From positions 62,001 to 126,000 of IMG/VR virus record IMGVR_UViG_3300008259_005066: 64,000 nucleotides of DNA; one strand, 5' to 3'. Both the position numbers and the translations under genes were made by a program. Of the stretch, positions 172-52,628 are shown one piece after another; the first letter of the stretch is position 1, and the number at the start of each line of letters is the position of its first letter. Under the pieces are notes generated by a model. The model had not been told where the DNA came from and ran no database searches. It saw only the letters and a list, made by a program, of their open reading frames with translations.

Positions 172-1494
172 TTAGTTCTGTAGGTAGCCATGCTTGTCAA
201 GTATGTGGGCAAATTCTGGATACAACACACGAGCGTCAAATCCAAACACACGATCCCAGCGATCGAGATGCTGTACCAATGCTGACCAACGACGATCTCG
301 ATCATCAGGTTCTGGTAGATCCAATATCCGCAGTATTTGTAATATCTGATTTTTGGCCACCCTGCGGAAGTTGTTGGGGTCACTTTCGTTATAGTCAGAC
401 CACACATCGGCTTCATCCAGTGCATATCTTGTCAACAAATCAAGATATGGCAGTCGATACTGATCTCTTATGTTTTTGGGTACCACAGTGATATCAAGGA
501 AATCTGGATCTGTGCAGAGATTGCTTTTGATCAACAACCCCTTTTGCAAAGCCAACTCAATGACTTGCCAATAACTGCGCACTGTCAGCAATCCCGGTGC
601 TGGTCTCAAGGTCACTGTGATCGTGGTGCCATTGCACTCATTGATGTAATTCTCGATGTTGGCCAGCACCATGCTATTATCTGTGCCCTGGCGAGTGTAT
701 TCATTGAGCGTGTCCAGAGTTTCTATGCTGATCTCAAGACCCACCCTGGGGAACCGTTTGAGTTTTTCGATGATCTTTTTGTCAAAGGAAGTGCCATTGG
801 TCACGAAACTCATGCACACATCTGTGCGACCATGATCGATCAGGAAATCCACTAGATCATGGAACCGAGGTTGTATTATGGTCTCCCCGCCCATGAAATG
901 TATGTTCTTGAGTTTGGATATTGATACTAACTCCTCGCGGAATCTATTCCATACTTCTGGATCAGCGGTCCAATCCTGTGATACAGCACTGATCATGTTC
1001 CATTGACGATGTTGGCTGGCGATGCGGCTGGATGCTGACGGGTTACACATCTTGCAGGCGAGATTGCAGTAGTTGCCAAGATCAATGTGCAGATCGATTG
1101 GCATGCCATCATATGCACCTGCGTTGGATCGACTGTGTTCAAATTTTTCGAACCCAGGACTTTGCTGGTAACTTTCTGCAAAATTCTGCTTGGTGAATAT
1201 CACTGATTTCTGATTGCTACGATGCCGACGACTGGTGTCACTGACCTGTTCTTCGTGCCAGCATCTAGCACAATGATTCCATTGCTGATCCCCTAGCACT
1301 TGTAATCTAGCTTCACGCATGGGCACAGAATCATACCACTCCTTTATGGACATGTTCCTGATGTTGTATCGCTGTTTCAGCGATGTATCATAGGGAACAT
1401 TGGGAGTGGCATGACAGCAAAACGCCAAAGCGCCGTCCCAGTAGATATGTAATTCATACCACGGGCTGTTGCAGAATATTCTTTGATTAGACAT
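172..1494 (-). CDS. Radical SAM protein with N-terminal SPASM/twitch-like Cys domain
   Basis: CNLACKMC (CxxxCxxC), FMGGE, VTNG motifs; N-terminal C..PW..CC..CARC. Confidence 0.85.
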
Positions 1495-11051: not shown

Positions 11052-11410
11052 GTTCCCACTGGGGTTATCATCTGATGTTGGATTGTAGTGGTTGTGATAT
11101 TGAATCTATATCCAACCGCGACAACATCTATAGATTCGTCAAGGATCTAGTGGATCGTATCGATATGACAGCACACGGAGAACCCGTGATCGAACATCTC
11201 CTGCCCGGAGACCCCAAACAGGGCTACAGCCTCATGCAGTTGATCACCACATCAAATATCTGTGGCCATTTCATGGAACTAGATGGCACGGCCTATTTTG
11301 ATGTGTTCAGTTGCAGAACTTTTGATATTGAAACTGCCAAGGCCGTGGTCGATGAATATTTCCATCCCAGAAAGATGCGTGTCAATTTCCTGACTAGACA
11401 CGCCGATTAG
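11048..11410 (+). CDS. speD: S-adenosylmethionine decarboxylase proenzyme family protein
   Basis: GYHLMLDCSGC, G.S...LITTSNICGHF, DVFSC. Confidence 0.8.
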   Translation: MSSHWGYHLMLDCSGCDIESISNRDNIYRFVKDLVDRIDMTAHGEPVIEHLLPGDPKQGYSLMQLITTSNICGHFMELDGTAYFDVFSCRTFDIETAKAVVDEYFHPRKMRVNFLTRHAD

Positions 11411-12188
11411 CGAAATAACTCCGCAAGTATCCTAGGCCTTTGTATTCGATCACAGCATCAGTCATGCTCATCACACTGCTGATGATCCTTTGTTTTTTAT
11501 CTGCGTCTTGGAACACATCCCGTAGTGGTATCATGTAGACTCTGATCAAAAACAGCGCGGCTTGACTGTGTATGGGTATAGTGGTCTGGCGTTCCGATCT
11601 GAACCACATGTCATCTATTGTCTCCGTGGACCATGCTTCTACACCACTGGGATGTCTGCTCAACGCAGGACGGTTGGCTATACTCCACACTGATCTTATG
11701 AAAGGACCCCGGGTAGTGATCATACGTGCGATGTGTCCAGATGCCTTGTTGACTATGTCAAAGTCTGGCACGGGTTCATGTATTTCAAGGAAAGTCTTGT
11801 TGACTTTGGTTTGAGGATCCCACCCCGATGGCAAGCACACACTCAGTATCTGTGCAGAGAGTTCGCCGGCACGATTGGGTGCCCATATCACAAAGTCTTC
11901 CTGTAGTGCCCGAGTTAGTTGCCACACAGGAGCATCTCCTTGGATCACAGGTGCAGTGGGATCATATTTTCTCAGTGCATCTACGGCTTGATAAACCAGT
12001 TCACGACTGGCTGAATCTCCATATACCGGATTGTAGTTGTTGAGTTTGGCGTCTTGATATCGATCAAAATCCCTGTCCGTGGTCAGTATGGACTCACCGG
12101 GTTGCCAAGGTCGCATGTGCGGCCGCATGGCATAGGGAACTTCTACATCAAAAGGGATATCACACAGTGACGTGCTTGGCGAAACCAT
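11394..12188 (-). CDS. DUF3445 / heme-dependent oxidative N-demethylase alpha-like protein
   Basis: LQEDFVI, CLPSGWDP..K, IHEPVP, RSERQT motifs; start uncertain. Confidence 0.75.
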   Translation of the reverse strand: MVSPSTSLCDIPFDVEVPYAMRPHMRPWQPGESILTTDRDFDRYQDAKLNNYNPVYGDSASRELVYQAVDALRKYDPTAPVIQGDAPVWQLTRALQEDFVIWAPNRAGELSAQILSVCLPSGWDPQTKVNKTFLEIHEPVPDFDIVNKASGHIARMITTRGPFIRSVWSIANRPALSRHPSGVEAWSTETIDDMWFRSERQTTIPIHSQAALFLIRVYMIPLRDVFQDADKKQRIISSVMSMTDAVIEYKGLGYLRSYFANRRV

Positions 12189-13179
12189 CTCTTGCTAGAT
12201 TTTTACCTTTGGCCTCGCACTGGATGTCAAACTGATCGGAGAAACCAGCGGCCCAGTCGTTCACAGCCGAATTCCAATAGAAATCCGAGTGGGCGCGGAG
12301 TTGCTGTTTTTTATGACCTCGTGCAAGAAGTCCAGCAAGATCTGGGCGAACTCGGGGATCATGATCAACAAGAATATCTTCGCGACTAACACTGTAATGC
12401 ATAGCAGGGCGAACGTCACGCCAAGACTCAACCACACGCTGAACACGATCATCTTGGGGATCGATGTATTCTCCTGTTTTGACCCAATGGTGATGAATGT
12501 CCAGCACAAGAGCCACGTTATCAGCCACAAGCAAAGTAAGGTCCAAACCATTTGATATCTCGTCGTTTTCGATAGTTATGAGATTGCGTGCCTCGGGGCT
12601 AAGTTTGCCCAGGCTACGCAAGAATTTTTCAGGCCCACCCTTGCCCGACAGGTGAACATTGATCTTGAAGCCATGATCATGCCAGGTGGCGCCATAGCCC
12701 ATCCAGCGGGCCATGTCTGCATGATATTCAAACTCTTGGATGCTACGTTCCACGATGCCGTCGTTCTCTGATGCTAACACACAGAACTGTCCAGGATGGA
12801 ATGAAAGTCTTACTCCCAACTCTCGGGCACGGGCACCCACAGGAGCAAAGATCTTTTCTAGGTGTCGTTGGATGTCTGCTTGTTGCCACCAGTCAATCCA
12901 GTTGGGTTCTGTGTAGCCTTGTAGCATTTCAGACCCCAGTCGAACCATGCGTAGATGATGAGGTAGACTGCCCACACGTTCTACCATGTTGAGAGCGGCC
13001 TGTGCATTGTGATTCATGATGTCCCACTGGCGCTGTTCTGCTTGGTCTGCATGCTCACGCAACCAACGCATGGTAGTGCTCCGCCCATTGAGTTCACGAT
13101 TCTTGGCATTGACTTTCATGCCAGCAGTTTCACTGGGATCGTCTAACCATTTACAACAAAAACCAATTCGAGCAGTCAT
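12160..13179 (-). CDS. uvsE: UV-damage endonuclease
   Basis: RIGFCCK, RLSFHPGQF, IENDE, LDIHHH, AHSD, EAKGK. Confidence 0.93.
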   Translation of the reverse strand: MTARIGFCCKWLDDPSETAGMKVNAKNRELNGRSTTMRWLREHADQAEQRQWDIMNHNAQAALNMVERVGSLPHHLRMVRLGSEMLQGYTEPNWIDWWQQADIQRHLEKIFAPVGARARELGVRLSFHPGQFCVLASENDGIVERSIQEFEYHADMARWMGYGATWHDHGFKINVHLSGKGGPEKFLRSLGKLSPEARNLITIENDEISNGLDLTLLVADNVALVLDIHHHWVKTGEYIDPQDDRVQRVVESWRDVRPAMHYSVSREDILVDHDPRVRPDLAGLLARGHKKQQLRAHSDFYWNSAVNDWAAGFSDQFDIQCEAKGKNLARDGFAKHVTV

Positions 13180-13197
13180 GAAAGCCTAGAAGAGTTA

Positions 13198-13746
13198 TCA
13201 ATTAAGTAATTGTAACACGGCTTCAAATTTATCGCAAGTGAGATTGGGGATTTTGGTCAGGCTTGCATCCAAATCATTGGCATGATCAATCAAGACAAAT
13301 TGGGTTTGAGGATAGGTATTTAGGGTGGCCCGAAAAGCATTAAGGTAATTGGTTTTCTTATGCTTTTGGAACTTGTCTGTTTCGGTAATCTTGCTGACAT
13401 CGTAACCAAAAAGCAAAACCAAATCTGCGGAGTCAGCCACGAGATGCATGGACACGATCTCTTCAGGGTGGTCGAACTCTCCTGGAAAATCTCCATCATA
13501 TAGATTTACCTTGGAAGGTCTGTTCAACGCACCATAGTTCTTGTTGGGTATGTAGAGATTGCACACAGCATGGAACGCTCTTTTTATCAATTCGTCGGCC
13601 TTGGAAAAATCGTGGCACAGAACATTGTCTGTCTGCCAGGCACGCCATGTGCGCCAAGATCCCCAGAGAGCCCCTATGTCTTTGAGTTGCCCAGGCTCGA
13701 TATGAGTTGCCGAGAACTCGTCGGCCAGCACACACACTATCCTCAC
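13198..13746 (-). CDS. Hypothetical protein
   Basis: GTG start overlapping the upstream TGA; Rossmann-like LLFGYD segment. Confidence 0.6.
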   Translation of the reverse strand: MRIVCVLADEFSATHIEPGQLKDIGALWGSWRTWRAWQTDNVLCHDFSKADELIKRAFHAVCNLYIPNKNYGALNRPSKVNLYDGDFPGEFDHPEEIVSMHLVADSADLVLLFGYDVSKITETDKFQKHKKTNYLNAFRATLNTYPQTQFVLIDHANDLDASLTKIPNLTCDKFEAVLQLLN

Positions 13747-15035
13747 TGTGACATCCTCACAGTTTGCCAACGGAATGCACCAAGACATACCCATGCAAAG
13801 ATACCATCACTGGCATTGGTATTAAACACTATGTCACCCTTGGTGCCACTGTAACCGGGCACTTCAGTGCTCCATGACAAGCGATTACGTGCTATCCGCA
13901 GTTGTTGCACAGTGACCATGCCATCACTGTCTACTTCTATGTGATTCTGGCGATTGACACCGATCACCAAATTTTGTTTTCGATTGCTGCCAATGAAACT
14001 GGTGTTCTTGCTGTATTTGCCCAGAGCGAGATTGGTTTCTTCGTCCCATACGCTGAGTGCGCTGTCAGGTTCTTGTGTGTTGACGCCAACGCGATTTTTT
14101 TGCACAGTTAAAGTCTTGGCTAGATTTGTGGTCCCCGATACTTCGAGATTTTCCACTGTGCCTAGTTTCTTGATATTGCTATTGACCACTCCGGCACTGA
14201 GAGTGTTGCCCGTGACCAATGGGTGCCCATCCACTGTGATGTTTTCGATTTCAATGCCGGATTTGGTAGAATCAATCACTGTGGCGATCAATTCGCTGGC
14301 GAAATCCTGTTTGATGCGGTCATAGGTAACATTGCCCACATGGCGGCTGAGATCCTGCCAGGTTTGGTTGTCAGTGTTGATGCGACCTTGTATGCCCAGG
14401 TCACCTTGGACCAAGACATCTCCGTTGATCTTCACGTTATGTTCCACTGTGAGATCGTGTGTGACAGTTTCGTGCTCGATGACCACCACTCCGTCCATGA
14501 CTGTGAGTTGGGTGGAGCCGGATTGATCAACTATGCCCGCAGTGCGGAAATCTCTCTTGATAGCAGTGATCAACTGGTCTTTGTTTTCCATTATGGCCTG
14601 AGAAATCTTGGCATTTAGATCTATATCTCTCAAGAGATTGCGTAGGCGATCTTCTGTGCGCTGTGCTATCAGCGTTTCAATTTTGGTAACCCATTGCGGA
14701 TCCACAGACAGATTGTTGATGGTATTTTCAACAAAACGTTCTACGGCTAGATCCACTGTCTGGCGGATCTTGTCCTGATCAACATAGGAATTCAAATCAG
14801 GAACAAATCCGCTGGCAAACATTTCGCCTACTTTGTGTTCCACAGTGGTCACGAGATCAGGCAAGGTTCCGATATTGCTGAATCTAGCCGTGATACGATC
14901 CTGCACGAACCCAATGATCTGCTGTTCGAGATCCTGGAGCCATTCGGGTTGACTCACTGCCTGTTGCACCTGCAGTCGTGCTTCGTTGCGTATTTCTTGT
15001 TCGACTATGTGTGCCAGTTGTTGTGCGTCAAGCAT
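13743..15035 (-). CDS. Putative structural/fibre-like protein
   Basis: Helical N-terminus, beta-repeat C-terminus (RVGVNT..P, KGDIVFN..WVC). Confidence 0.55.
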   Translation of the reverse strand: MLDAQQLAHIVEQEIRNEARLQVQQAVSQPEWLQDLEQQIIGFVQDRITARFSNIGTLPDLVTTVEHKVGEMFASGFVPDLNSYVDQDKIRQTVDLAVERFVENTINNLSVDPQWVTKIETLIAQRTEDRLRNLLRDIDLNAKISQAIMENKDQLITAIKRDFRTAGIVDQSGSTQLTVMDGVVVIEHETVTHDLTVEHNVKINGDVLVQGDLGIQGRINTDNQTWQDLSRHVGNVTYDRIKQDFASELIATVIDSTKSGIEIENITVDGHPLVTGNTLSAGVVNSNIKKLGTVENLEVSGTTNLAKTLTVQKNRVGVNTQEPDSALSVWDEETNLALGKYSKNTSFIGSNRKQNLVIGVNRQNHIEVDSDGMVTVQQLRIARNRLSWSTEVPGYSGTKGDIVFNTNASDGIFAWVCLGAFRWQTVRMSQ

Positions 15036-15948
15036 GCTCTCTCCATAGGTCCAGCGTCACGCAATGGAAACCACCGCCCAAGGTGCGACTGTGACTCAAT
15101 CGGTGTCCTATCACTGTGATACCGTGTTTTTCTAACTCTCTTTGTAGCACCCGTTGATCACTGTCCATGATCACTGTGTTAGGATCTACCACGAGCATAT
15201 TTAAGGCTATCCATTTAGAAGCATAGGGGTATTGATAAAATCCCTGTTCTTTGACATAGTCAACGTAGAGCACTTCCCAATCTTTCAAGGCCCTAGGCAG
15301 ATTTTCTGGTGTGACTCGTGCGGCATTGACAATGACCAATCCTTCTCTGATCGGGACTATGGTAGAATCTATATGCACGCCAGAATAAAAATTGCAAAGT
15401 TCTATCGTGATATGTGGAAATTGTTCGCACAGCCATTCATAGGCTTTACGATTGCCCGATGCACTTTCTAGATATAGCCAAGTATCGCCAAGTCTGCACA
15501 CATTGGCTGCGTCCAATATCATGCCTTCGTTGCGCGGCATGTGCAGATATCTTTCACAAGAATCAACTACATCATGATAGGCCGCCAATTCCATGTCTCT
15601 GCAAGGATACATCATGGCAGGATCCACTATGGTTTCGCCGGCTACCAATAATCTATCTCTGGGGCAATAGTTATACATCCCTCCCAAGGCAACAAAATCT
15701 ATTTCTTGTGGACGGTATACTTCTACACCTAGCCCAGTGAGTTTGTGTGCGAGATCATCCAGTTCAGATTCTGCTTCATCCACTATCCATTGTGGCACAG
15801 GACCTGATGGAACTGGTGTTTCTTTCCACAAGGTCTTTTCACTTTCCAGGGCAAACACAGGATCTTGGCTAGGCCAATTGGCATGCTTGGCAGATCCTAT
15901 CACTATGGATCGCAAAGGATCCCATTCATTGTAGCTAGATATTTTCAC
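15028..15948 (-). CDS. Amidinotransferase (glycine/inosamine-phosphate amidinotransferase family)
   Basis: NEWDPL, CPRD, DAAN, HIDST, GGGFHCVT (catalytic Cys). Confidence 0.9.
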   Translation of the reverse strand: MKISSYNEWDPLRSIVIGSAKHANWPSQDPVFALESEKTLWKETPVPSGPVPQWIVDEAESELDDLAHKLTGLGVEVYRPQEIDFVALGGMYNYCPRDRLLVAGETIVDPAMMYPCRDMELAAYHDVVDSCERYLHMPRNEGMILDAANVCRLGDTWLYLESASGNRKAYEWLCEQFPHITIELCNFYSGVHIDSTIVPIREGLVIVNAARVTPENLPRALKDWEVLYVDYVKEQGFYQYPYASKWIALNMLVVDPNTVIMDSDQRVLQRELEKHGITVIGHRLSHSRTLGGGFHCVTLDLWREHA

Positions 15949-16478
15949 AGATGTCCTGTTATTTGTAGAGTGTAACGATCTTCAAGACCGATGTTGGCTG
16001 CCATGTGCGGCACATCATAAATCCATTCTGCCACTGTGCCTGCATGCCATTTGACCACAGGATCGCCCTGCACTTCTAGATAGTGTCCCGACTGCCAATC
16101 TTCCAACATCACCAATGCCCGGCGTATGTTGTATTCTTGACCTTCCAGTCCAAACAATTTTACATACTTTACATAACGATCTTGATGCACTGGCATCACT
16201 GTTCCGGAAGTCATTCTATAGTAAGATGTTCCAATATCTTTCCACCCCATGGCAGAAAAATAGTCTACGAAAAGATGATTCCAACTGGGTTGACGTCCTT
16301 TCATGTCTGCCATGGATCCACATATTTTGGGTTGATATCCTTGGGCCATCCATCGTCTCACATCTTCTGAATCGTTGAACGGCTCTTGGATGTAATCTAG
16401 ATGCTTGAATTCATCATCCCAAAAAACATCCAAACTGTAAATTTTATAATCCAGTCCGGCCATCTCGTGTGTTGCCAT
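15945..16478 (-). CDS. 2OG-Fe(II) oxygenase-like protein
   Basis: HQD (HxD), distal H in PHMAAN, R in DRYTLQITG. Confidence 0.75.
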   Translation of the reverse strand: MATHEMAGLDYKIYSLDVFWDDEFKHLDYIQEPFNDSEDVRRWMAQGYQPKICGSMADMKGRQPSWNHLFVDYFSAMGWKDIGTSYYRMTSGTVMPVHQDRYVKYVKLFGLEGQEYNIRRALVMLEDWQSGHYLEVQGDPVVKWHAGTVAEWIYDVPHMAANIGLEDRYTLQITGHL

Positions 16479-17688
16479 AATGGATCACATTATATTGTGG
16501 TGTAGAAGGCATTTTCCGCCAAGGATCAACAATGACAGAACCATAGGCTATGGGAGAATAGAACGTGTCATCTCTCACATCACCAGTGTATCCATAGGTG
16601 ATTTGTCGATTGTGTGCCAGCAACAATACACAAGGACCAGTGATCGATTGGACTACATCGTCGCTGTCATCTGCCAAGGGATCTAAGTATTTCACAGAAT
16701 AACCGGCCTCCTTGATATAGAATCCTATCAACGTGGAGTAGCTACCGATACAGTAGGCAACATCAGGCTTGTATGCCTTGCCATGTATGACTATAGGCAA
16801 ATTCTTTTCTTTGGCTTGGTCTACTAAAAAGTGTGCTAGATTTTTTGCTTGTATTTCTCGAGCATGCATGATGGTGTCAAACAAGTCATAGCCAATGTCA
16901 TACTCTTCGGCCAACCAACGCAAGGCGATGTTGTCTCGAGGATGGCAAGCACCTGCATCGCCCATGCCCGCGGTCATGTATTTGGGTCCCATGATACGCA
17001 TGGTTGATTGGGCAAGGGCATCGGTCACAACATCCACATTGATGTTGCCAATCTTCAGCGCAAAATCCTGTATCATGTTCACCAGTCCAACCTTGGCAGA
17101 AATGAATGTGTTGTAGAAAATCTTGATGGCTTCGCACTCGTCCCAGGTACCTGTGACATAACGGGGATTGTTTTTCATCAACGGGCGATATAGATCGATT
17201 AGATCACGCATCTCAGATGCATCACCAGTTTCTGTCCCGATCATGACCATTTCGGGATTGGCCATATCCCATTTGACCGAGCCCATGGCTATGAGGTAAG
17301 GATTATAAAGGAACTGATGCTGTGGACCCAACAAGTTGGCAAAATGTCTGCGTGTGGTTCCCGGCAACACTGTAGAGATCAATACCACACGCTTGGGTGT
17401 GTCAGCATGTTCATTGATCTGACTAATAGCGTCTTTCACCGCATCATGCCCAAAGTCTCGAGGCTCCATGTGCGAGCTGGGCACTGATCCATCATAGCCC
17501 TCGGCGTGTGGAGTTGGCACAGCGATAAAGATCCAGTCGCTTTTTTTGACCACTTCGTCAATGCCACAAACTTCAACGGTATCACTATACCTCGGATATA
17601 TATCATACCCTCGGACTGTGTAACGTTCAGCAAATACCTCTGCACAGTCTAGACCCAGTTTTCCTAGACCAATAAAACCTATATTCAT
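16444..17688 (-). CDS. UDP-glucose/GDP-mannose 6-dehydrogenase family
   Basis: GFIGLGKLG, AVPTP, STVLPGT, K..YN, GACHPRD; SD GGAGG before MNIGF. Confidence 0.92.
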   Translation of the reverse strand: MNIGFIGLGKLGLDCAEVFAERYTVRGYDIYPRYSDTVEVCGIDEVVKKSDWIFIAVPTPHAEGYDGSVPSSHMEPRDFGHDAVKDAISQINEHADTPKRVVLISTVLPGTTRRHFANLLGPQHQFLYNPYLIAMGSVKWDMANPEMVMIGTETGDASEMRDLIDLYRPLMKNNPRYVTGTWDECEAIKIFYNTFISAKVGLVNMIQDFALKIGNINVDVVTDALAQSTMRIMGPKYMTAGMGDAGACHPRDNIALRWLAEEYDIGYDLFDTIMHAREIQAKNLAHFLVDQAKEKNLPIVIHGKAYKPDVAYCIGSYSTLIGFYIKEAGYSVKYLDPLADDSDDVVQSITGPCVLLLAHNRQITYGYTGDVRDDTFYSPIAYGSVIVDPWRKMPSTPQYNVIHYGNTRDGRTGL

Positions 17689-17703
17689 TGTTTCCTCCAT
17701 TAA

Positions 17704-19005
17704 ATGACAGTGCCTGCTCATAATTTATACGATTTTATACATCAGGTCACAGAAAAACGTTTCTGGTTGTTGTATTTTTACCAATGGGGTAATAAAGATC
17801 TCAAGAACGTTTTGGACTACCAAAAGGACTATGAACACACAAAAGGACCCAATGGCATAGATAATCTGCTGGGAGAAACCTTCTTAGATCCAGATCAGAT
17901 AGGACTAAGCAGATTTTCATTGGCTAGGAATTTCCAACCGGTATTGTTTTGTCATGATCAAGAACCACTGAATTATGAACTGTATCAAGATGGACAGCCG
18001 TTGTTACACAAAACCGAAGAGTTCAATCGACAGGATTATAACTTTCCTGTGCAGGATCAAAATCTCAGAAACACCATAGTATGGTCTTGGCAAAAACAAT
18101 GGATCCTATTGCATTCTGAAATCAATTCCCCTCAACTGCAAAAATATGAATCCACTGGTCGTTATTGCGGCGCTTACTGGTGGAGCCATGCGTTGATTGC
18201 CCGTGATTGGTATAGATTTGCCCAACATGATCAAAGTCTCGAGAGAAAAAAGATCAAAAAAATATTTTTGATATATTGCAGAGATCAGACTGGTACCAGA
18301 CAATATCGCCAACAGGTCATGGATCATCTAAAACACAATGGACAATGTGATTTTGCAAATCCTACAACAGCAGATGCCATGGCCAGCGCCTATTATAACA
18401 GTGAAGATTTTTGCAAGACTGGTATAAGCCTGATCTTGGAAACTCTGTTTGAAGATCCAAGGATACACTTGACTGAGAAAACACTCAGGCCCATAGCCTG
18501 CGGACATCCATTTATCTTGGCTGCCGGACCCGGCGCCCTGGCAGTGTTAAAATACTATGGATTTGAGACTTTTAGCCCTTGGATTGATGAGTCATACGAT
18601 CATGAGTCCGATCATTCCACCCGCCTTGATCTCATACTCAAAGAGGTTGACAGGTTGTCTTCAATGGCTCCCGAACAACTCAATGAAATACTTGCTCATT
18701 GCTGGGCCGTGGCCCAGAGAAATAAACAACGGTTCTTTTCGGATAATTTCCTGAAATTCATAAAAGATGAACTTTACCATAACGTCATGCAAGCATATGG
18801 AAGGACCCAGAACAAATTGGATCCTTCATACTGGTGGTATGTGCGTCAATGGCGAAAGCAACACTTGCCTCAGAGTCCGCGATCTAACAAATACACCTTG
18901 CACCTGGTCAGACATCTACGACTCAACCAAGGGTCACTTGAACAATATCAGCGCCATGATCACAGCCTGGATGATGAATCCGGCACCAATTGTGACAATG
19001 TTTAA
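17704..19005 (+). CDS. Glycosyltransferase-like protein (GT10-like TEK motif)
   Basis: LILET...LTEKTLRPI..GHPF...GFETF..IDESYD. Confidence 0.6.
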   Translation: MTVPAHNLYDFIHQVTEKRFWLLYFYQWGNKDLKNVLDYQKDYEHTKGPNGIDNLLGETFLDPDQIGLSRFSLARNFQPVLFCHDQEPLNYELYQDGQPLLHKTEEFNRQDYNFPVQDQNLRNTIVWSWQKQWILLHSEINSPQLQKYESTGRYCGAYWWSHALIARDWYRFAQHDQSLERKKIKKIFLIYCRDQTGTRQYRQQVMDHLKHNGQCDFANPTTADAMASAYYNSEDFCKTGISLILETLFEDPRIHLTEKTLRPIACGHPFILAAGPGALAVLKYYGFETFSPWIDESYDHESDHSTRLDLILKEVDRLSSMAPEQLNEILAHCWAVAQRNKQRFFSDNFLKFIKDELYHNVMQAYGRTQNKLDPSYWWYVRQWRKQHLPQSPRSNKYTLHLVRHLRLNQGSLEQYQRHDHSLDDESGTNCDNV

Positions 19006-19257
19006 CGTATCCTTGAGCACCACTGCTCGTCCAAACAACAGCACCAGACCAGCCCACATAAACAGCACCACGTCTACAGAAGGAGTGCGATCACTGAGTC
19101 CCGTGAGTATGGCCAGCAATGTGGGTATGGTGGCCGAGTGGATCAGGATCACTGCCAGCCATCCCAGTGTTTCGGCTGAGACCGTGTGTAACTGATTGGC
19201 GAGATATTGGCTGAATCCTGCTCGGACATTTCCTATGAATTGGAAAAACTTGCTCAT
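18934..19257 (-). CDS. Multi-pass membrane protein, holin candidate
   Basis: About 3 TM helices; coupled (ATGA) to the cell-wall hydrolase. Confidence 0.6.
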   Translation of the reverse strand: MSKFFQFIGNVRAGFSQYLANQLHTVSAETLGWLAVILIHSATIPTLLAILTGLSDRTPSVDVVLFMWAGLVLLFGRAVVLKDTLNIVTIGAGFIIQAVIMALILFK

Positions 19258-19859
19258 GCGCCCTTCTCCTTCTTCTTGTAGAATCTGTGTGCTCCAAACT
19301 TGCCCACGTATTGCATGTTGGGCCAACCCGGATTTACATAGTCAGCATGGAAATACAGGGCCTCCTTGAGGCTGGGCAGTCGGAATCCCTCTAATAGGAC
19401 CTTCTTGGCCACTTCCATGCTCTCATCCCATAGTGCAGGGTGTATGGGTCGGACCTTGTGATGTGGTTCACAGTACCAAGAGAATTGGCATACGACCTTT
19501 TCGTATACCACGTTCTTTTGATAAACCACTCCACAGACGTCCTTGCCAAAACGACCGTCTTCTACGCGATTGATAGTGACTTGGGCCACACCCACTTTGC
19601 CTTCAAAAGGCTCAGAGGCGGCTTCCCAATAGATATTGCGGGCCAAGCATTCTAGTTGCTTGGAGCGATCCGCTGTGGACACGAAGCCTTGGCGCCATGA
19701 GGCCGCTTCGTTGTCAGATGCAAGAGCATCCAGACGCAAATTGGTGACTGTGATCAAGATCGATGCTACGATCATTAGGCCGATCACACGGGGCAGACTT
19801 ACAAAAAGTTTGGCCATGTCAACTTGGTGCGTTCTTGACTTTGATGTTGTCTCTGTCAT
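19254..19859 (-). CDS. SleB/Hydrolase_2 cell-wall hydrolase
   Basis: CLARNIYWEA..E..GK..VAQVTINRV, CQFSW, ALYFHA; N-terminal TM. Confidence 0.92.
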   Translation of the reverse strand: MTETTSKSRTHQVDMAKLFVSLPRVIGLMIVASILITVTNLRLDALASDNEAASWRQGFVSTADRSKQLECLARNIYWEAASEPFEGKVGVAQVTINRVEDGRFGKDVCGVVYQKNVVYEKVVCQFSWYCEPHHKVRPIHPALWDESMEVAKKVLLEGFRLPSLKEALYFHADYVNPGWPNMQYVGKFGAHRFYKKKEKGA

Positions 19860-20035: not shown

Positions 20036-20356
20036 TCAAAATCGCTGAGATTTTGGAAGAAAATTCCCATTTACGATGTCAGAGGATTCACCCACGCCCA
20101 AGATACAACCGGTGACGCGACCATACTGCACCAGAGTCCAGGCTCCGGTGGTTTCATTGAGAAAAAGACTGAATTGGCTGGTGTCTTGACTACTTTTTCC
20201 GATCCACAGTGGAAACTCTCGATACTTGTCTTTCATCAAAGTTTCCACTATCTCCCGGAATGGGCCGCAGGTCACTGGTTTGTCCCGCTCGGTCCACTCG
20301 CTCGCCATCGCTGAGATCGGTAGGATGGCGAGGATGAGGGCGATGATTTTTTTCAC
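20036..20356 (-). CDS. Secreted hypothetical protein
   Basis: Signal peptide MKKIIALILAILPISAMA; two Cys. Confidence 0.75.
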   Translation of the reverse strand: MKKIIALILAILPISAMASEWTERDKPVTCGPFREIVETLMKDKYREFPLWIGKSSQDTSQFSLFLNETTGAWTLVQYGRVTGCILGVGESSDIVNGNFLPKSQRF

Positions 20357-20897
20357 AGATCTCAGGGTGTGGATCCTGTGCTGGTCCCATCTTGCCCGAG
20401 GATGCTACAAATGGTGCAGGTGCTCCAAAACTGGGTGCTGTAGGTGCGGCACCGGGTGCGCCGAATCCGCCCATGGGCTTGTTAAAACTCATTGATGCTC
20501 CGCCAAAACTGGCAGATGCACTCAGGCCTCCCATGCCACTGGTGCCGCTGTTGCTGGGATTACCACTCACAGGAGTAGATCTCGTGGCCGCTTCCAGGGC
20601 TTTCATCTTGGCTTCTTTATCGTCTTTGCCGGCCAACATGATGCCCGACAGCGTACCGGTAAGGAACGTAGCAATGGGTATGATCAGTTCAAAAAACTTC
20701 TGATCTATGGGGCTCATAGCGTTGAGTGGCTGGGTGACGAATATGATTGAATACAGCACCACAAACACTATGCCTGTCAGTGTCAGCGCCAAGCAAACAC
20801 CTATGAAAAAACGCAGGCGGGCCATGAGCTGATCTTCGGTGTAGATAAATGGATCTTCTTGATCTTTTTCTTTGAAAAATTTAAAAATCATTTGCAA
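20190..20897 (-). CDS. Two-TM membrane protein; true stop probably near 20357
   Basis: Two TM helices and a G/A/P-rich tail; after HPEI the frame runs into the next gene. Confidence 0.65.
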   Translation of the reverse strand: MQMIFKFFKEKDQEDPFIYTEDQLMARLRFFIGVCLALTLTGIVFVVLYSIIFVTQPLNAMSPIDQKFFELIIPIATFLTGTLSGIMLAGKDDKEAKMKALEAATRSTPVSGNPSNSGTSGMGGLSASASFGGASMSFNKPMGGFGAPGAAPTAPSFGAPAPFVASSGKMGPAQDPHPEICEKNHRPHPRHPTDLSDGERVDRAGQTSDLRPIPGDSGNFDERQVSRVSTVDRKK

Positions 20898-50267: not shown

Positions 50268-51320
50268 ATGATAAGTCAACGTAAAGTTTCAAGTCACAGC
50301 CAATGGCAACCATTGAAAGAAGTATGGGTAGGTGGCACTTATCCTGCAGATTTTTACCAGCATCTTGGCAACAAATCCCACGATATTTTTGCAAAAATCA
50401 CTGAAATTACCAACAAAGATTTTGACAATCTAACAGACACATTGGAAAAATTAGGTGTCACAGTAGTCAGGCCTCAATTCGATCGTATAGACGACTTTTT
50501 AGACGAACATGATCATTTGCTTAAACCACCGGTAAGTCCATGCGACATAGCACTGACACTAGGAGATACTTTGCATCTCATGCCTCAATACACGTCCGAA
50601 GTAAATCCCTATCAACGTGCTGTAGATGATTATCGCCAAGCAGGACAAAAAATACATGTCATTGACCGTGCTACACCAGAACCATGGGCCTGGATGATTT
50701 TTGCCAGCGTGGTGCGGGCCGGAAAAGATATACTGATAGATTATCAGCCAAATATACCAGAATCAAAAAAATACACGTATCTGGTAGCACAGGAATTAGC
50801 CAAAGATTATAGAGTGCATCTCAGTGGCACTGGAGATCATAACGACGGAGTTTTTTGTCCGATTAGGCCAGGGCATATTTTTACGTCTCATTATAGAAAG
50901 GTCTATGACTCAAGTTTTCCAGGATGGTCTGTGTTCCATCTGCCAGACACCACATATAAAAATCTCCAACACGTTGGTATAGCCGACAAGTGGTATCTAC
51001 CCGGAGTAGACTACGGGCATTTCAACGCAGATATAATGGCCGTGGCAGAACAATGGTTAGGCAATCCGCAAGAAACTGTTTTTGAAGTCAATATGTTGGT
51101 AGTAGACGAAAAAAATATCATATGTGGCGCTTACGATGAAATGGCTTTTCAATATTTTGAATCTCTAGGTATCACTCCGCATTTGGTAGAATTTCAATCT
51201 AGATATTTTTGGGATGCCGGAATACACTGCGTTTGTAGTGATATACATCGATCAGGGGGCCGGGAGGATTATTGGCCTGAGCGCGGGGACAGCGGCATCT
51301 ATTATATAACGGAGTGGTAA
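50268..51320 (+). CDS. Second amidinotransferase-family protein (divergent)
   Basis: SQWQPLKEVWVG, SPCD, HNDG, EVNML, DAGIHCV. Confidence 0.82.
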   Translation: MISQRKVSSHSQWQPLKEVWVGGTYPADFYQHLGNKSHDIFAKITEITNKDFDNLTDTLEKLGVTVVRPQFDRIDDFLDEHDHLLKPPVSPCDIALTLGDTLHLMPQYTSEVNPYQRAVDDYRQAGQKIHVIDRATPEPWAWMIFASVVRAGKDILIDYQPNIPESKKYTYLVAQELAKDYRVHLSGTGDHNDGVFCPIRPGHIFTSHYRKVYDSSFPGWSVFHLPDTTYKNLQHVGIADKWYLPGVDYGHFNADIMAVAEQWLGNPQETVFEVNMLVVDEKNIICGAYDEMAFQYFESLGITPHLVEFQSRYFWDAGIHCVCSDIHRSGGREDYWPERGDSGIYYITEW

Positions 51321-51791
51321 ATGAAAGAACGAATACGTTTTGAATTCGACATAAGATCAGAATTTTGGGATAAATTTCCCATGATAGAAATTTCCGTTGA
51401 TGATCGTATCAAATGCACAAAAACTCTAGATCAAAAGCAATGCAAATTATCCTTTGAGGATGATCTAGAATTTGATCGCCCACACACAGTATCTTTAAAG
51501 AGATTTAACAAAACAGATGATCAATGCGTGATTGATAACAATGGATCTCGGTTCGATCAATATGTTATCTTGAATCAAGTTTGTATTGATGGTATCGATG
51601 TGCAGAATCTCATCTGGCACCGCAGTTGGTTTGAACCTATCTATTCCACAGTATGGAAACAACAACAGATAGATGCTGGAGTTGCGTTGGAAGAAAAAAT
51701 CATCGGAGAAACTTGGTTAAGTCACAATGGGACATGGAAGTTTGAATTTTTCAGTCCTTTTTATAAATTTATTATCTCACAATTTGAGTAA
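51321..51791 (+). CDS. Hypothetical protein
   Basis: 156-aa ORF in operon. Confidence 0.7.
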   Translation: MKERIRFEFDIRSEFWDKFPMIEISVDDRIKCTKTLDQKQCKLSFEDDLEFDRPHTVSLKRFNKTDDQCVIDNNGSRFDQYVILNQVCIDGIDVQNLIWHRSWFEPIYSTVWKQQQIDAGVALEEKIIGETWLSHNGTWKFEFFSPFYKFIISQFE

Positions 51792-51797
51792 ATCATC

Positions 51798-52628
51798 ATG
51801 ACATGGCAATTAACTAAAACAACAAAAACTCTCTTTCCTGTGAAAGATCAAAAAATGATATCATTGCGACAGTCATGGTATCACGATGCTCAAAGACAAA
51901 GCACCTATCAAGACTTTTTCCCGATGGCAAAAGAATGGTTCACATCAACCAAGATCAACGATATACAAGGGTGGGACGCTTTCCCTCATGTGGACGTGAC
52001 CATGGGATGCACACATTATATAGAAAGTTTTGTCCAAAAGCATGGATGGAATGGATTTCAGATACTCAAGAACGAATATGCTTATTATACCCTAATGGGC
52101 AAACATGGAGTAGAAGTCAATGACCTTGAGCCCAACAAGCCATTGATCATCACCATGCCCCATTGGACTTTTTGCGATGTCAGACCGGAGTGGGAGGATG
52201 TTCTAAGAATCTGCGAACAGAGGATGATTGATATCCACATCGATATGGCATGGATTGTCACTGCCAAAGATATCCATCTAGATCTCAATCATCCCTGCAT
52301 CAAAAGCATTGGTGTGAGTCTCAGCAAATTGAGCCTACAATGGAATCGAGTAGGACTACGATTCAGCAGGCAAAAATCCATGGATTCTGTGACAATATTC
52401 AACGACTACTACAAAGATACCAACACAGTGATCACTTCTATCGGTTGCTATTGGATTGATAATTTTGAAAGAGATTATCTATGGAATTCCTATGGCGGTC
52501 AACATCAAGAAATTTGTAGGACTTTAGATATCTTGCCAACAAAAATAATACATGTGGCCAAAGATAAAACAGGACAATCGTTAGGTATCGGTAAGATGCT
52601 TGGAGATGCGACTCCACACAGCGTATAA
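51798..52628 (+). CDS. PLP-dependent fold-type-I-like enzyme (truncated aminotransferase-like)
   Basis: IDMAW, SLSK, RVG motifs. Confidence 0.6.
   Translation: MTWQLTKTTKTLFPVKDQKMISLRQSWYHDAQRQSTYQDFFPMAKEWFTSTKINDIQGWDAFPHVDVTMGCTHYIESFVQKHGWNGFQILKNEYAYYTLMGKHGVEVNDLEPNKPLIITMPHWTFCDVRPEWEDVLRICEQRMIDIHIDMAWIVTAKDIHLDLNHPCIKSIGVSLSKLSLQWNRVGLRFSRQKSMDSVTIFNDYYKDTNTVITSIGCYWIDNFERDYLWNSYGGQHQEICRTLDILPTKIIHVAKDKTGQSLGIGKMLGDATPHSV

What the first reader, a model, noticed from the sequence alone, without database searches (positions are those of the whole stretch)
15028..19005. Amidinotransferase cassette 1: possible guanidino-sugar pathway
Seen: an overlapping run of UDP-sugar dehydrogenase, 2OG oxygenase and amidinotransferase genes leads straight into a fibre-like gene, with a GT10-like transferase divergent only 15 bp away. 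Known: amidinotransferases guanidinylate amines, as StrB1 does in streptidine synthesis. Inference: the phage builds an unusual amidino/guanidino-modified glycan for virion proteins, the host surface or DNA.
Basis: partly seen in the sequence, partly recalled or inferred. Interest (0 to 1): 0.68.

Follow-up and report, generated by a model that had tools for sequence, protein, structure and literature searches.

The report
Jumbo-phage amidino-sugar glycosylation gene module
A freshwater jumbo phage carries a tightly conserved set of four genes (a nucleotide-sugar dehydrogenase, a small iron oxygenase, a streptomycin-type amidinotransferase and an unannotated glycosyltransferase) that most likely builds and attaches an unusual nitrogen-rich sugar, but nobody has yet tested what the sugar is or what it decorates.

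Summary
The 306-aa protein is a StrB1-like amidinotransferase (PDB 1bwd, E 2.7e-63) with an intact Cys-His-Asp triad. The 177-aa protein has no Pfam hit but folds as a 2OG/Fe(II) oxygenase with invariant HxD...H...R. The 414-aa protein belongs to the UDP-Glc/GDP-Man dehydrogenase family. The divergent 433-aa protein is an unannotated GT-B glycosyltransferase with a GT10-like E..TEK motif.

Linkage is strong. In 80 related viral contigs the oxygenase precedes the amidinotransferase in 80, the dehydrogenase is present in 74 and the transferase in 74. Natural fusions join the oxygenase to the transferase and to a DegT sugar aminotransferase, and probably the transferase to the dehydrogenase. Distant phages, including cultured cyanophage S-SCSM2R, repeat the set in other gene orders.

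The "fibre-like" gene is a variable passenger (29 of 80 loci) with no detectable family.

My best reading is a nucleotide-sugar pathway: 6-oxidation, 2OG-dependent oxidation, transamination by a short DegT encoded elsewhere in the genome, amidination from arginine, then transfer. The reaction order, the substrate and the target are inferred. DNA is the least supported target. This is a new variant of virus-encoded glycosylation; interest 0.6.

The parts
16444..17688 (-). Nucleotide-sugar 6-dehydrogenase (414 aa from ATG 17688; the longest ORF runs to 17721)
   Evidence: Pfam UDPG_MGDP_dh_N 1.3e-13 and central domain 7.3e-15, both above cut-off. phrog_9148 E 9e-86. TIGR03026 scores 135 bits, below its cut-off. 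Best PDB matches are UDP-glucose 6-dehydrogenases, E 7e-17. The start is set by the GGAGG site and by homologue lengths. Present in 74 of 80 related loci at 58-87% identity.
15945..16478 (-). p177: minimal 2OG/Fe(II) oxygenase of a phage-restricted, unannotated family
   Evidence: No Pfam, PHROG or NCBIfam hit. AlphaFold model pLDDT 91. VIA Z 14.3 to 3dkq, 14.0 to PiuC and 13.9 to P4H. H98, D100, H158 and R168 are invariant in 28 homologues. Lies upstream of the amidinotransferase in 80 of 80 loci. 28% identical to S-SCSM2R ORF308, which holds the same position. Fused to p433-like and DegT domains in P0266, P0268 and P0365.
15028..15948 (-). amid306: StrB1-like amidinotransferase (guanidino-group-modifying superfamily)
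   Evidence: PDB 1bwd (inosamine-phosphate amidinotransferase) E 2.7e-63; HsvA, SxtG and AGAT at about 1e-27 to 1e-29. D98, H192, D194 and C296 are invariant and D146 is present in 80 of 81 phage homologues. More than 7000 metagenomic relatives at E<=1e-10.
17704..19005 (+). p433: unannotated GT-B glycosyltransferase with a GT10-like nucleotide-sugar motif, divergent from the operon
   Evidence: No Pfam, PHROG or NCBIfam hit. Model pLDDT 82. VIA Z 11.9 to T4 BGT, 10.8 to 8xsh, 10.6 to H. pylori FucT, and 9-10 to POGLUT1/2 and FUT9/11/13. Invariant R202, E246, T247, E258 and K259. Present in 74 of 80 loci at only 26-52% identity. Ten paralogues in the complete relative G001, nine of which keep E[TS]..[TS]EK. 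Two 151-nt metatranscriptome contigs lie inside the gene.
17689..17703 (.). 15-bp gap between the divergent start codons
   Evidence: Read directly from the sequence. It is too short to hold two promoters. Sigma-70-like sites in 13000-19500 are no more frequent than in shuffled sequence (14 against 11.6).
13743..15035 (-). p430: variable downstream passenger gene of unknown family (the 'fibre-like' gene); probably not part of the core module
   Evidence: Overlaps the amidinotransferase stop by 8 nt. Present in only 29 of 80 related loci; elsewhere UvdE follows directly. No family or PDB match. The only lead is a viral cluster with PTL_trimer at 0.89.

Best explanation
The four genes are a phage module that makes an unusual nucleotide-activated sugar and transfers it to an acceptor inside the infected cell.

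Proposed order of steps:
1. The dehydrogenase oxidises C6 of an NDP-hexose to a uronic acid.
2. p177 uses Fe(II), O2 and 2-oxoglutarate to oxidise a ring carbon to a ketone.
3. A truncated DegT-type PLP aminotransferase turns the ketone into an amine. In this phage lineage it is encoded about 100 kb away; in other lineages it is adjacent or fused to p177. This step regenerates 2-oxoglutarate from glutamate, which would explain the DegT-p177 fusion.
4. The StrB1-like amidinotransferase moves the amidino group of arginine, through its Cys296 thio-uronium intermediate, onto that amine to give a guanidino sugar.
5. The GT-B enzyme p433 transfers the finished sugar.

Shown here: the family or fold of each enzyme, intact catalytic residues, tight conserved linkage, and domain fusions.

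Inferred: the order of steps, the identity of the sugar, that the amine acceptor is a sugar, and the target.

My preferred target is virion surface protein, by analogy with giant viruses and mycobacteriophages. Host envelope glycan comes next, and DNA last.
For: Enzyme identities. Catalytic residues are invariant.

Linkage within the clade:
- p177-amidinotransferase in 80 of 80 loci, dehydrogenase in 74 of 80, p433 in 74 of 80.
- This holds at identities down to 64% (amidinotransferase), 42% (p177) and 26% (p433).
- When the dehydrogenase is lost (six loci), p433-p177-amidinotransferase stay together.

Linkage outside the clade:
- S-SCSM2R has short DegT, radical SAM, GT, p177 homologue, amidinotransferase and GT2 in a row.
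- L095 has short DegT, an amidinotransferase (36% identity) and a GT-p177-GT fusion, then a carbamoyltransferase.
- L117 has dehydrogenase, p177, short DegT, GTP cyclohydrolase I and amidinotransferase.
- L096 has a DegT-p177 fusion, an SDR dehydratase/epimerase and a p433-like C-terminal half.

Fusions: P0266 and P0268 against the p433 profile give probability 99.4%, E about 1e-21. P0365 carries DegT (PF01041, E 1e-15) plus p177. A 788-aa BFVD protein named as a UDP-glucose/GDP-mannose dehydrogenase matches the p433 fold.

Short DegT: it keeps the SFxxxKxxxxGxGG lysine motif, weakly matches NtdA and WbpE, and is present in four of four nearly complete relatives.

The amidinotransferase is much closer to StrB1, whose acceptor is an aminocyclitol phosphate, than to amino-acid amidinotransferases.

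The p177-amidinotransferase pair occurs with different transferase types (GT-B here, GT-A in S-SCSM2R, DUF6492 in L058). This fits a role in making the donor.

The complete relative G001 invests heavily in glycans. It has ten p433 paralogues, three amidinotransferase-family genes, DegT, SDRs, GDP-mannose 4,6-dehydratase, a carbamoyltransferase and four radical SAM genes.

No cassette protein has a transmembrane segment.
Against: - No biochemical data exist for any member of these families.
- The cassette holds no aminotransferase in any of the 80 close loci, so the amine source is inferred from an unlinked gene.
- A 2OG oxygenase that makes a keto sugar for transamination has no exact precedent that I can cite. 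p177's nearest solved folds are mostly protein prolyl hydroxylases.
- The dehydrogenase lacks a detectable C-terminal UDP-binding Pfam domain and falls below NCBIfam cut-offs.
- The 80 loci are related, so part of the synteny is inheritance.
- p433's best single structural match is a DNA glucosyltransferase.
- The predicted p433-p177 complex gave no verdict.
Confidence: 0.45

Rival explanations
1. DNA hypermodification. p177 hydroxylates a base in phage DNA, as JBP or TET enzymes do. p433 then glycosylates that base with a uronic or amidinated sugar, as T4 beta-glucosyltransferase does, to block host nucleases.
For: - p433's top structural match is T4 BGT (Z 11.9), and T4 AGT scores Z 9.0.
- The cassette lies among DNA-metabolism genes: UvdE, ligase, RNR, helicases and primase.
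- Phage DNA glycans, including hexuronic acids and multi-sugar chains, are documented (bioRxiv 10.1101/2023.12.21.572611; PMC13326640).
Against: - Four relatives that are 91-100% complete have no ThyA-type hydroxymethylase/hydroxylase and no C5-cytosine methyltransferase. There is no Tet_JBP hit either, though that search had no positive control.
- p177 is fused to a sugar aminotransferase and travels with SDR sugar enzymes. This points to sugar chemistry, not base chemistry.
- The GT10-type E..TEK motif is not a BGT feature, from my own knowledge.
- The DNA assembles from standard libraries in at least 17 studies. This is weak evidence.
Confidence: 0.12
2. Free metabolite. The genes make a diffusible guanidinylated aminoglycoside- or aminocyclitol-like small molecule, an 'antibiotic' as suggested for S-SCSM2R, rather than a glycoconjugate.
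For: - StrB1 is the nearest characterised enzyme.
- The companions are the enzyme types of aminoglycoside pathways: DegT/StrS-family aminotransferase, TobZ/NodU-type carbamoyltransferase, radical SAM enzymes and GT-B.
- The S-SCSM2R authors proposed antibiotic synthesis, without a test (PMC12801897).
Against: - Ten paralogous transferases per genome, plus GDP-mannose dehydratase and several SDRs, fit a polymer or oligosaccharide better than a pseudo-di- or trisaccharide.
- No inositol-phosphate synthase, kinase or exporter was seen near the cassette.
- A lytic jumbo phage has little time to benefit from a secreted antibiotic (inference).
Confidence: 0.15
3. Protein hydroxylation followed by glycosylation. 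p177 hydroxylates a Pro, Lys or Asp residue of a phage or host protein. p433 glycosylates that hydroxyl with glucuronic acid from the dehydrogenase, as in collagen, Skp1 or mimivirus L230. The amidinotransferase acts separately, for example on lysine side chains or on a small amine.
For: - p177's best solved neighbours include the protein hydroxylases P4H/EF-Tu, PHD2 and viral collagen P4H, with a faint Asp_Arg_Hydrox signal in relatives.
- p433 resembles the protein O-glycosyltransferases POGLUT1/2, SdgB, OGT and SPY.
- Oxygenase-transferase fusions mirror the hydroxylase-GT fusions LH3 and L230, from my own knowledge.
- The fast evolution of p433 fits a variable protein acceptor.
- An amidinotransferase and a P4H-like protein were found in purified S-SCSM2R virions (PMC12801897).
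Against: - The DegT-p177 fusion and the recurring short DegT and SDR neighbours are hard to explain if p177 acts on protein.
- The amidinotransferase is the most constant partner of p177 but would have no role in this scheme.
- No candidate acceptor is conserved beside the module, since p430 is in only 29 of 80 loci.
Confidence: 0.13
4. Amino-acid or guanidine metabolism that is unrelated to glycans. The amidinotransferase makes guanidinoacetate or homoarginine, and p177 hydroxylates the guanidino compound, as plant homoarginine-6-hydroxylases release guanidine. This would adjust host nitrogen metabolism. The sugar genes would be mere neighbours.
For: - Amidinotransferase plus 2OG oxygenase is the invariant pair (80 of 80 loci).
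- The plant 2-ODD-C23 precedent, from my own knowledge.
- Public annotations call relatives 'glycine amidinotransferase'.
Against: - Fusions tie p177 physically to a glycosyltransferase and to a sugar aminotransferase.
- The enzyme is much closer to StrB1 than to AGAT.
- Linkage to the dehydrogenase and p433 persists at low identity and in rearranged loci.
Confidence: 0.05

Closest known systems
StrB1, scyllo-inosamine-4-phosphate amidinotransferase of Streptomyces griseus (PDB 1bwd)
   Same: Full-length homology (E 2.7e-63, two aligned blocks covering residues 3-303). Asp98, Asp146, His192, Asp194 and Cys296 are conserved and correspond to StrB1 D108, D179, H227, D229 and C332. By homology the donor should be arginine and the acceptor a carbohydrate-like amine.
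   Different: About 40 residues shorter; StrB1 residues 139-172 have no counterpart. It is encoded by a phage. It is not accompanied by inositol-pathway genes. Its partners are a 2OG oxygenase, an NDP-sugar dehydrogenase and a glycosyltransferase.
Pseudomonas aeruginosa WbpA/WbpB/WbpE pathway to UDP-2,3-diacetamido-2,3-dideoxy-mannuronic acid (with WbpG forming the acetamidino group)
   Same: The logic is the same: 6-dehydrogenase, ring oxidation, DegT-family transamination coupled through 2-oxoglutarate/glutamate, then N-modification that gives an amidine-type group on a uronic acid (own knowledge). The short DegT weakly matches WbpE.
   Different: Ring oxidation would be done by a 2OG oxygenase instead of the NAD enzyme WbpB. 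The nitrogen group would come from a Cys-dependent amidinotransferase (guanidino) and not from an asparagine-synthase-like amidotransferase (acetamidino). No acetyltransferase is present in the cassette. None of this was tested.
GT10 alpha1,3-fucosyltransferases (H. pylori FucT, FUT9/11/13)
   Same: GT-B fold with Z 9-10.6. The C-domain pattern of an invariant Arg, then E-T/S, then ..TEK, resembles the FENS..YxTEK donor-binding motif (the motif is from my own knowledge).
   Different: No Pfam PF00852 hit and sequence identity of about 9%. T4 BGT scores slightly higher. There is a C-terminal helical extension at residues 300-420. Donor and acceptor are unknown.
Virus-encoded glycan machineries: Mimivirus fibril clusters (L136-L142), chlorovirus capsid glycans, mycobacteriophage capsid glycosylation
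   Same: The virus carries its own nucleotide-sugar enzymes (dehydratases, DegT aminotransferases) and many glycosyltransferases. Mimivirus L138 and other giant-virus transferases are structural neighbours of p433 (review PMC9614988).
   Different: No amidinotransferase, no p177-type oxygenase and no p433-type family is described there. The target in this phage is unknown.
Uncharacterised amidinotransferase modules of cultured phages: Synechococcus phage S-SCSM2R ORF305-310 and Campylobacter phages CP220/CPt10
   Same: S-SCSM2R has the p177 homologue directly upstream of a 35%-identical amidinotransferase, with short DegT, radical SAM and glycosyltransferases around it. CP220 has a 23%-identical amidinotransferase flanked by radical SAM genes and followed by two GT-A genes (PMC2853527).
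   Different: Neither has a p433 homologue. CP220 has no p177 homologue. In S-SCSM2R the dehydrogenase is not linked to the module. Function is unknown in both; the papers offer 'antibiotic synthesis' or 'metabolic fitness' as guesses.

Membership tests
Amidinotransferase (AGAT/StrB1 branch of the guanidino-group-modifying superfamily) | Full-length sequence homology to characterised amidinotransferases | tested here: met
   1bwd E 2.7e-63; HsvA 1.8e-29; SxtG 6e-28; AGAT 4e-27.
Amidinotransferase (AGAT/StrB1 branch of the guanidino-group-modifying superfamily) | Catalytic Cys-His-Asp triad and the two substrate-binding Asp residues | tested here: met
   C296, H192 and D146, plus D98 and D194, align with StrB1 C332, H227, D179, D108 and D229. 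They are invariant or 80 of 81 in phage homologues.
Amidinotransferase (AGAT/StrB1 branch of the guanidino-group-modifying superfamily) | Pfam PF02274 score above the gathering cut-off | tested here: not met
   17.8 bits against a cut-off of 22.8, on the C-terminal 56 residues only. The model is poor for this branch; the PDB homology overrides it.
Amidinotransferase (AGAT/StrB1 branch of the guanidino-group-modifying superfamily) | Transfer of the amidino group from arginine to an amine | not testable with these tools
   Needs an enzyme assay.
UDP-glucose/GDP-mannose 6-dehydrogenase family | N-terminal NAD-binding and central domains | tested here: met
   PF03721 at 51.3 bits and PF00984 at 55.3 bits, both above cut-off.
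UDP-glucose/GDP-mannose 6-dehydrogenase family | Catalytic cysteine in the GGxCxxKD-type motif | tested here: met
   The sequence reads GDAGACHPRD. The motif itself is from my own knowledge.
UDP-glucose/GDP-mannose 6-dehydrogenase family | C-terminal UDP-binding domain, and a score over the NCBIfam equivalog or subfamily cut-offs (needed to name the substrate) | tested here: not met
   No PF03720 hit. TIGR03026 scores 135 against 189.8, and all equivalogs are far below cut-off. The substrate sugar therefore cannot be named.
2OG/Fe(II)-dependent oxygenase | Double-stranded beta-helix fold | tested here: met
   Model pLDDT 91. VIA Z 14.3, 14.0 and 13.9 with rmsd about 3 A over about 150 residues. 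246 Foldseek hits at E<=1e-3.
2OG/Fe(II)-dependent oxygenase | HxD...H iron triad and a basic residue about 10 positions after the distal His to bind 2OG | tested here: met
   H98, D100, H158 and R168 are invariant in 28 sequences.
2OG/Fe(II)-dependent oxygenase | Match to a curated sequence family (Pfam, NCBIfam or PHROG) | tested here: not met
   No hit. Relatives give only faint PF05118 signals.
GT10 fucosyltransferase | GT-B fold | tested here: met
   Z 10.6 to 5zoi, and 9.1-9.3 to FUT9, FUT11 and FUT13.
GT10 fucosyltransferase | Sequence-family match (PF00852) | tested here: not met
   No Pfam family at E<=0.01 except a chance DUF4296 hit. I therefore do not file it as GT10, only as GT10-like.
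GT10 fucosyltransferase | Donor-binding motif (Arg; E-N/T-S/T; xTEK) | tested here: inconclusive
   R202, E246-T247 and T257-E258-K259 are invariant or nearly invariant, and 9 of 10 paralogues keep the pattern. The equivalence to GT10 residues was not checked by a residue-level superposition.
T4-type DNA glucosyltransferase system | Genome encodes a route to a hydroxylated or hydroxymethylated base (ThyA homologue, or C5-MTase plus TET) | tested here: not met
   PF00303 in 0 of 4 and PF00145 in 0 of 4 nearly complete relatives. PF12851 in 0 of 4, but without a positive control.
Phage tail fibre (for the 430-aa gene) | Any recognisable fibre, spike or chaperone domain | tested here: inconclusive
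   No hits. A PTL_trimer lead at 0.89 is below the reliable range.

The most novel reading that the evidence does not exclude
Phages make a guanidino sugar, a class of glycan building block not described in any glycoconjugate. The route would be new: a minimal 2OG oxygenase replaces the usual NAD-dependent sugar oxidase and is metabolically coupled, and sometimes fused, to a truncated DegT aminotransferase through the 2-oxoglutarate/glutamate pair. A StrB1-like enzyme then amidinates the amine, and a previously unrecognised, phage-specific GT-B family with about ten paralogues per genome installs the product on virions.
Probability: 0.3. Interest if true: 0.8.

Novelty: new variant of a known kind. 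Interest (0 to 1): 0.6.

Why it matters
Virus-encoded glycosylation is known from giant viruses, some mycobacteriophages and DNA-modifying phages. Amidinotransferases have never been placed in such a pathway.

This module is common. More than 200 viral contigs and thousands of metagenomic proteins carry it, lake metagenomes from at least 17 studies hold this very DNA, and rearranged versions occur in a cultured marine cyanophage.

If the product is a cationic guanidino sugar on virions, it would change how we think about phage surface charge, adsorption and evasion of host receptors or grazers. If it is on DNA, it would be a new hypermodification.

The work also gives first functional handles on two large unannotated protein families, p177 and p433. 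It offers a cultured system, S-SCSM2R ORF305-310, in which the idea can be tested directly.

Tried and rejected
- Megablast of the region against 50,697 phage records gave no match. tblastn of p433 against the same set gave no match.
- Pfam, PHROGs and NCBIfam found nothing for p177, p433 or p430.
- For p430, a single-sequence PDB search, a profile PDB search and a Pfam scan of all 23 family members found nothing.
- I tested whether small genes beside related enzymes are p177 homologues. CP220 gp085 and HTVC008M gp163 and gp164 are not.
- The 305-aa gene inserted between p177 and the amidinotransferase in L054 is not a second amidinotransferase and has no family. Inserts in L044 and L045 are NUMOD3 homing endonucleases.
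- A scan of one genome per prokaryote species with the p177 profile gave only six hits. All are on MAG or short contigs carrying the same phage-type module, so no cellular pathway could be used as a guide.
- Complex prediction on p433 plus p177 gave no verdict (score 0.00). This is not evidence either way.
- Promoter-like sites are not enriched.
- Expression: only two short metatranscriptome contigs lie on p433 and none on the minus-strand operon. That is too little to call transcription.

Full report
**Where the window lies.** The window is bases 62001-126000 of a 209.5-kb IMG/VR virus record that CheckV rates 60% complete. A 315.8-kb record, G001, is 91% complete and identical in all twelve proteins I compared around the locus. 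Relatives reach 343-364 kb, and one has terminal repeats. The UvsW-type helicase is 50-55% identical to those of Sinorhizobium phage Phosso, Agrobacterium phage Atu_ph07, Pseudomonas jumbo phages and the E. coli 350-kb phages. This is therefore a jumbo myovirus. The same DNA is held in lake and freshwater metagenomes of at least 17 studies.

**The observation.**

The ORFs are as described.

- *Dehydrogenase.* The longest frame is 16444-17721, but ATG 17688 follows a GGAGG site and gives the 412-414 aa length of the homologues. The gap to the divergent ATG 17704 is then exactly 15 bp.
- *Operon packing.* On the minus strand the genes are translationally packed. The dehydrogenase and p177 overlap by 35 nt, p177 and the amidinotransferase share GTGA, and the amidinotransferase and p430 overlap by 8 nt.
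- *Amidinotransferase.* This is the strongest call: StrB1 at E 2.7e-63, against about 1e-27 for glycine-type and other amidinotransferases. Residues D98, D146, H192, D194 and C296 match the StrB1 active site and are invariant, or 80 of 81, in phage homologues.
- *Dehydrogenase family.* It has the NAD-binding and central domains and a GACHPRD cysteine motif. It falls below every substrate-specific cut-off, so the sugar cannot be named.
- *p177.* It has no sequence family. A confident model (pLDDT 91) is a double-stranded beta-helix with Z about 14 to 2OG oxygenases. H98, D100, H158 and R168 are invariant.
- *p433.* It has no sequence family. Its model (pLDDT 82) is a GT-B glycosyltransferase. 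T4 BGT scores Z 11.9, H. pylori FucT 10.6, POGLUT about 10 and FUT9/11/13 about 9. The invariant R202, E246-T247 and E258-K259 recall the GT10 donor motif.
- *p430.* I found nothing that identifies it.

**Linkage within the clade.**

A viral-contig scan gave 203 relatives of the amidinotransferase, and I analysed the best 80, at 64-100% identity. The results were:

| Gene | Loci of 80 | Note |
|---|---|---|
| p177 | 80 | lies immediately upstream of the amidinotransferase |
| Dehydrogenase | 74 | |
| p433 (divergent) | 74 | |
| UvdE (downstream) | 73 | |
| p430 | 29 | |

- In four of the 80 loci a homing endonuclease or an unknown gene is inserted between p177 and the amidinotransferase.
- p430 is therefore a variable insert, not a core member.
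- In the six loci without the dehydrogenase, p433, p177 and the amidinotransferase remain together.
- p433 evolves fastest, at 26-52% identity.

**Linkage beyond the clade.**

Because these loci are related, I looked further afield.

- *Cultured cyanophage S-SCSM2R.* It has a p177 homologue (28% identity, E 6e-23) directly upstream of a 35%-identical amidinotransferase. The pair sits inside a run of glycosyltransferases, a 195-aa DegT-type protein and a radical SAM gene.
- *Profile search over 1.84 billion representatives.* It found 912 p177 relatives. Among them are fusion proteins:
  - P0266 is p177 plus a p433-type C-terminal half.
  - P0268 is p433-type, p177, then p433-type. hhalign probability is 99.4% at E about 1e-21.
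  - P0365 is a DegT aminotransferase N-terminal part plus p177.
- *Fusion contexts.*
  - L095 carries short DegT, an amidinotransferase (36% identity), the P0268 fusion and a carbamoyltransferase.
  - L096 carries the DegT-p177 fusion, an SDR dehydratase/epimerase and a p433-like half.
- *MAG contig L117.* It has dehydrogenase, p177, short DegT, GTP cyclohydrolase I and amidinotransferase in a row.
- *BFVD.* The list of p433 structural neighbours includes a 788-aa phage protein named as a UDP-glucose/GDP-mannose dehydrogenase, probably a transferase-dehydrogenase fusion.
- *Prokaryote genomes.* A scan of one genome per species found only six p177 hits, all on such phage-like contigs. The family is essentially viral.

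**The missing amine.**

The cassette has no aminotransferase.

- The short DegT subfamily that neighbours or fuses with p177 elsewhere is present in G001 at 185387-185986. It is also present in three further nearly complete relatives at 67-74% identity.
- It keeps the PLP-lysine motif and weakly matches the sugar aminotransferases NtdA and WbpE.
- G001 also has two full-length DegT genes.
- G001 carries a 25-kb glycan island. Its genes include p433 paralogues, SDRs, GDP-mannose 4,6-dehydratase, a third amidinotransferase-family gene, a NodU-type carbamoyltransferase and four radical SAM/SPASM genes.
- In all, G001 has ten p433 paralogues, and nine keep the E..TEK pattern.

**Mechanism.**

I propose a donor-synthesis pathway ending in transfer:

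1. 6-oxidation by the dehydrogenase.
2. 2OG-dependent oxidation of a ring carbon by p177.
3. Transamination by the short DegT. This returns 2-oxoglutarate from glutamate and gives a chemical reason for the DegT-p177 fusion.
4. Amidination from arginine by the StrB1-like enzyme.
5. Transfer by p433.

The p177-amidinotransferase pair occurs with GT-B, GT-A or DUF6492 transferases in different phages. That fits a role in making the donor rather than recognising the acceptor. The closest known logic is the WbpA/B/E route to 3-amino uronic acids, from my own knowledge. Everything about the order of steps, the substrate and the product is inference.

**Target.**

- No cassette protein has a membrane segment.
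- DNA is disfavoured. Four nearly complete relatives lack a ThyA-type enzyme and a C5-methyltransferase. These are the two known routes to glycosylatable bases (PMC13326640; bioRxiv 10.1101/2023.12.21.572611). It is not excluded, since T4 BGT is the top fold match.
- Virion protein is my first guess by analogy with giant viruses (PMC9614988). In S-SCSM2R a second amidinotransferase and a P4H-like protein were detected in purified virions (PMC12801897).
- I rank host envelope glycan second. A free aminoglycoside-like metabolite, suggested without a test for S-SCSM2R, remains a separate rival to the whole glycoconjugate reading.

**What is known.** The searchable literature has no functional study of a phage amidinotransferase. 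CP220/CPt10 authors noted an interchangeable module of radical SAM genes plus a putative amidinotransferase of unknown role (PMC2853527).

**Verdict.** This is a new variant of virus-encoded glycosylation, and it brings two unannotated enzyme families to light. Interest 0.6.

Noticed in passing
window 50268-52628 (+): A second amidinotransferase-family gene of 350 aa: AGAT E 5e-9, 21% identical to amid306, with the catalytic Cys, His and two of the three Asp aligned (the D146 position is Ile). It opens a low-GC island (0.40-0.42 against about 0.48) and is followed by two ORFs (156 and 276 aa) with no family or PDB match.
   Followed up: partly
G001:C1:240729-265196 (outside the window; loci L111, L112). 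A GME-like match at G000:C1:164064-164234 may be the same gene region.: A glycan island of about 25 kb in the complete relative. It holds six p433 paralogues, two SDR epimerase/dehydratases, GDP-mannose 4,6-dehydratase, DegT, a third amidinotransferase-family gene (247749-248804), a NodU/CmcH carbamoyltransferase and four radical SAM/SPASM genes.
   Followed up: partly
G001:C1:185387-185986 (L108:5387-5986), and L121-L123: A truncated (about 200 aa) DegT-type aminotransferase subfamily that keeps the PLP lysine motif. It is conserved in all nearly complete relatives. In other phages it lies adjacent to, or is fused with, p177 and the amidinotransferase.
   Followed up: partly
window 11394-13179 (-): UvdE UV-damage endonuclease (PF03851, E 6.5e-32) follows the cassette in 73 of 80 relatives. 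Next to it in this phage is a HODM_asu-like gene (haem-dependent oxidative N-demethylase alpha-subunit family, PF11927, E 2.5e-29), seen in only 4 of 80 loci.
   Followed up: no
L044:7369-7926 (-) and L045:5596-6264 (+): NUMOD3 homing-endonuclease genes are inserted inside the cassette in some relatives, between p177 and the amidinotransferase or between p433 and the dehydrogenase. In L053, L054 and L056 a 305-aa gene of unknown family sits between p177 and the amidinotransferase.
   Followed up: partly
L115-L120 (genome contigs): Contigs carrying this phage-type module are filed in MAGs labelled Haliscomenobacter, Legionella, Legionellales, Pacearchaeota and Terrimicrobiaceae, and in a Synechococcus lacustris assembly. 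They are likely binned phage DNA and not reliable host evidence.
   Followed up: no
window 19254-19859 (-) and 20190-20897 (-): A SleB-type cell-wall hydrolase (PF07486, E 1e-21) with an N-terminal hydrophobic segment, and beside it a 235-aa protein with a strong transmembrane segment. This may be a lysis pair just beyond p433.
   Followed up: no
window 17774-17924 and 18045-18195: Two 151-nt contigs from a freshwater metatranscriptome match p433 at 99% or more. None match the minus-strand operon. This is too little to conclude expression, and DNA carry-over is possible.
   Followed up: partly
window 172-1494 (-): A radical SAM protein (phrog_14086, E 1e-15) lies at the start of the window. 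Radical SAM genes recur beside amidinotransferases in CP220, S-SCSM2R, L095 and G001.
   Followed up: no
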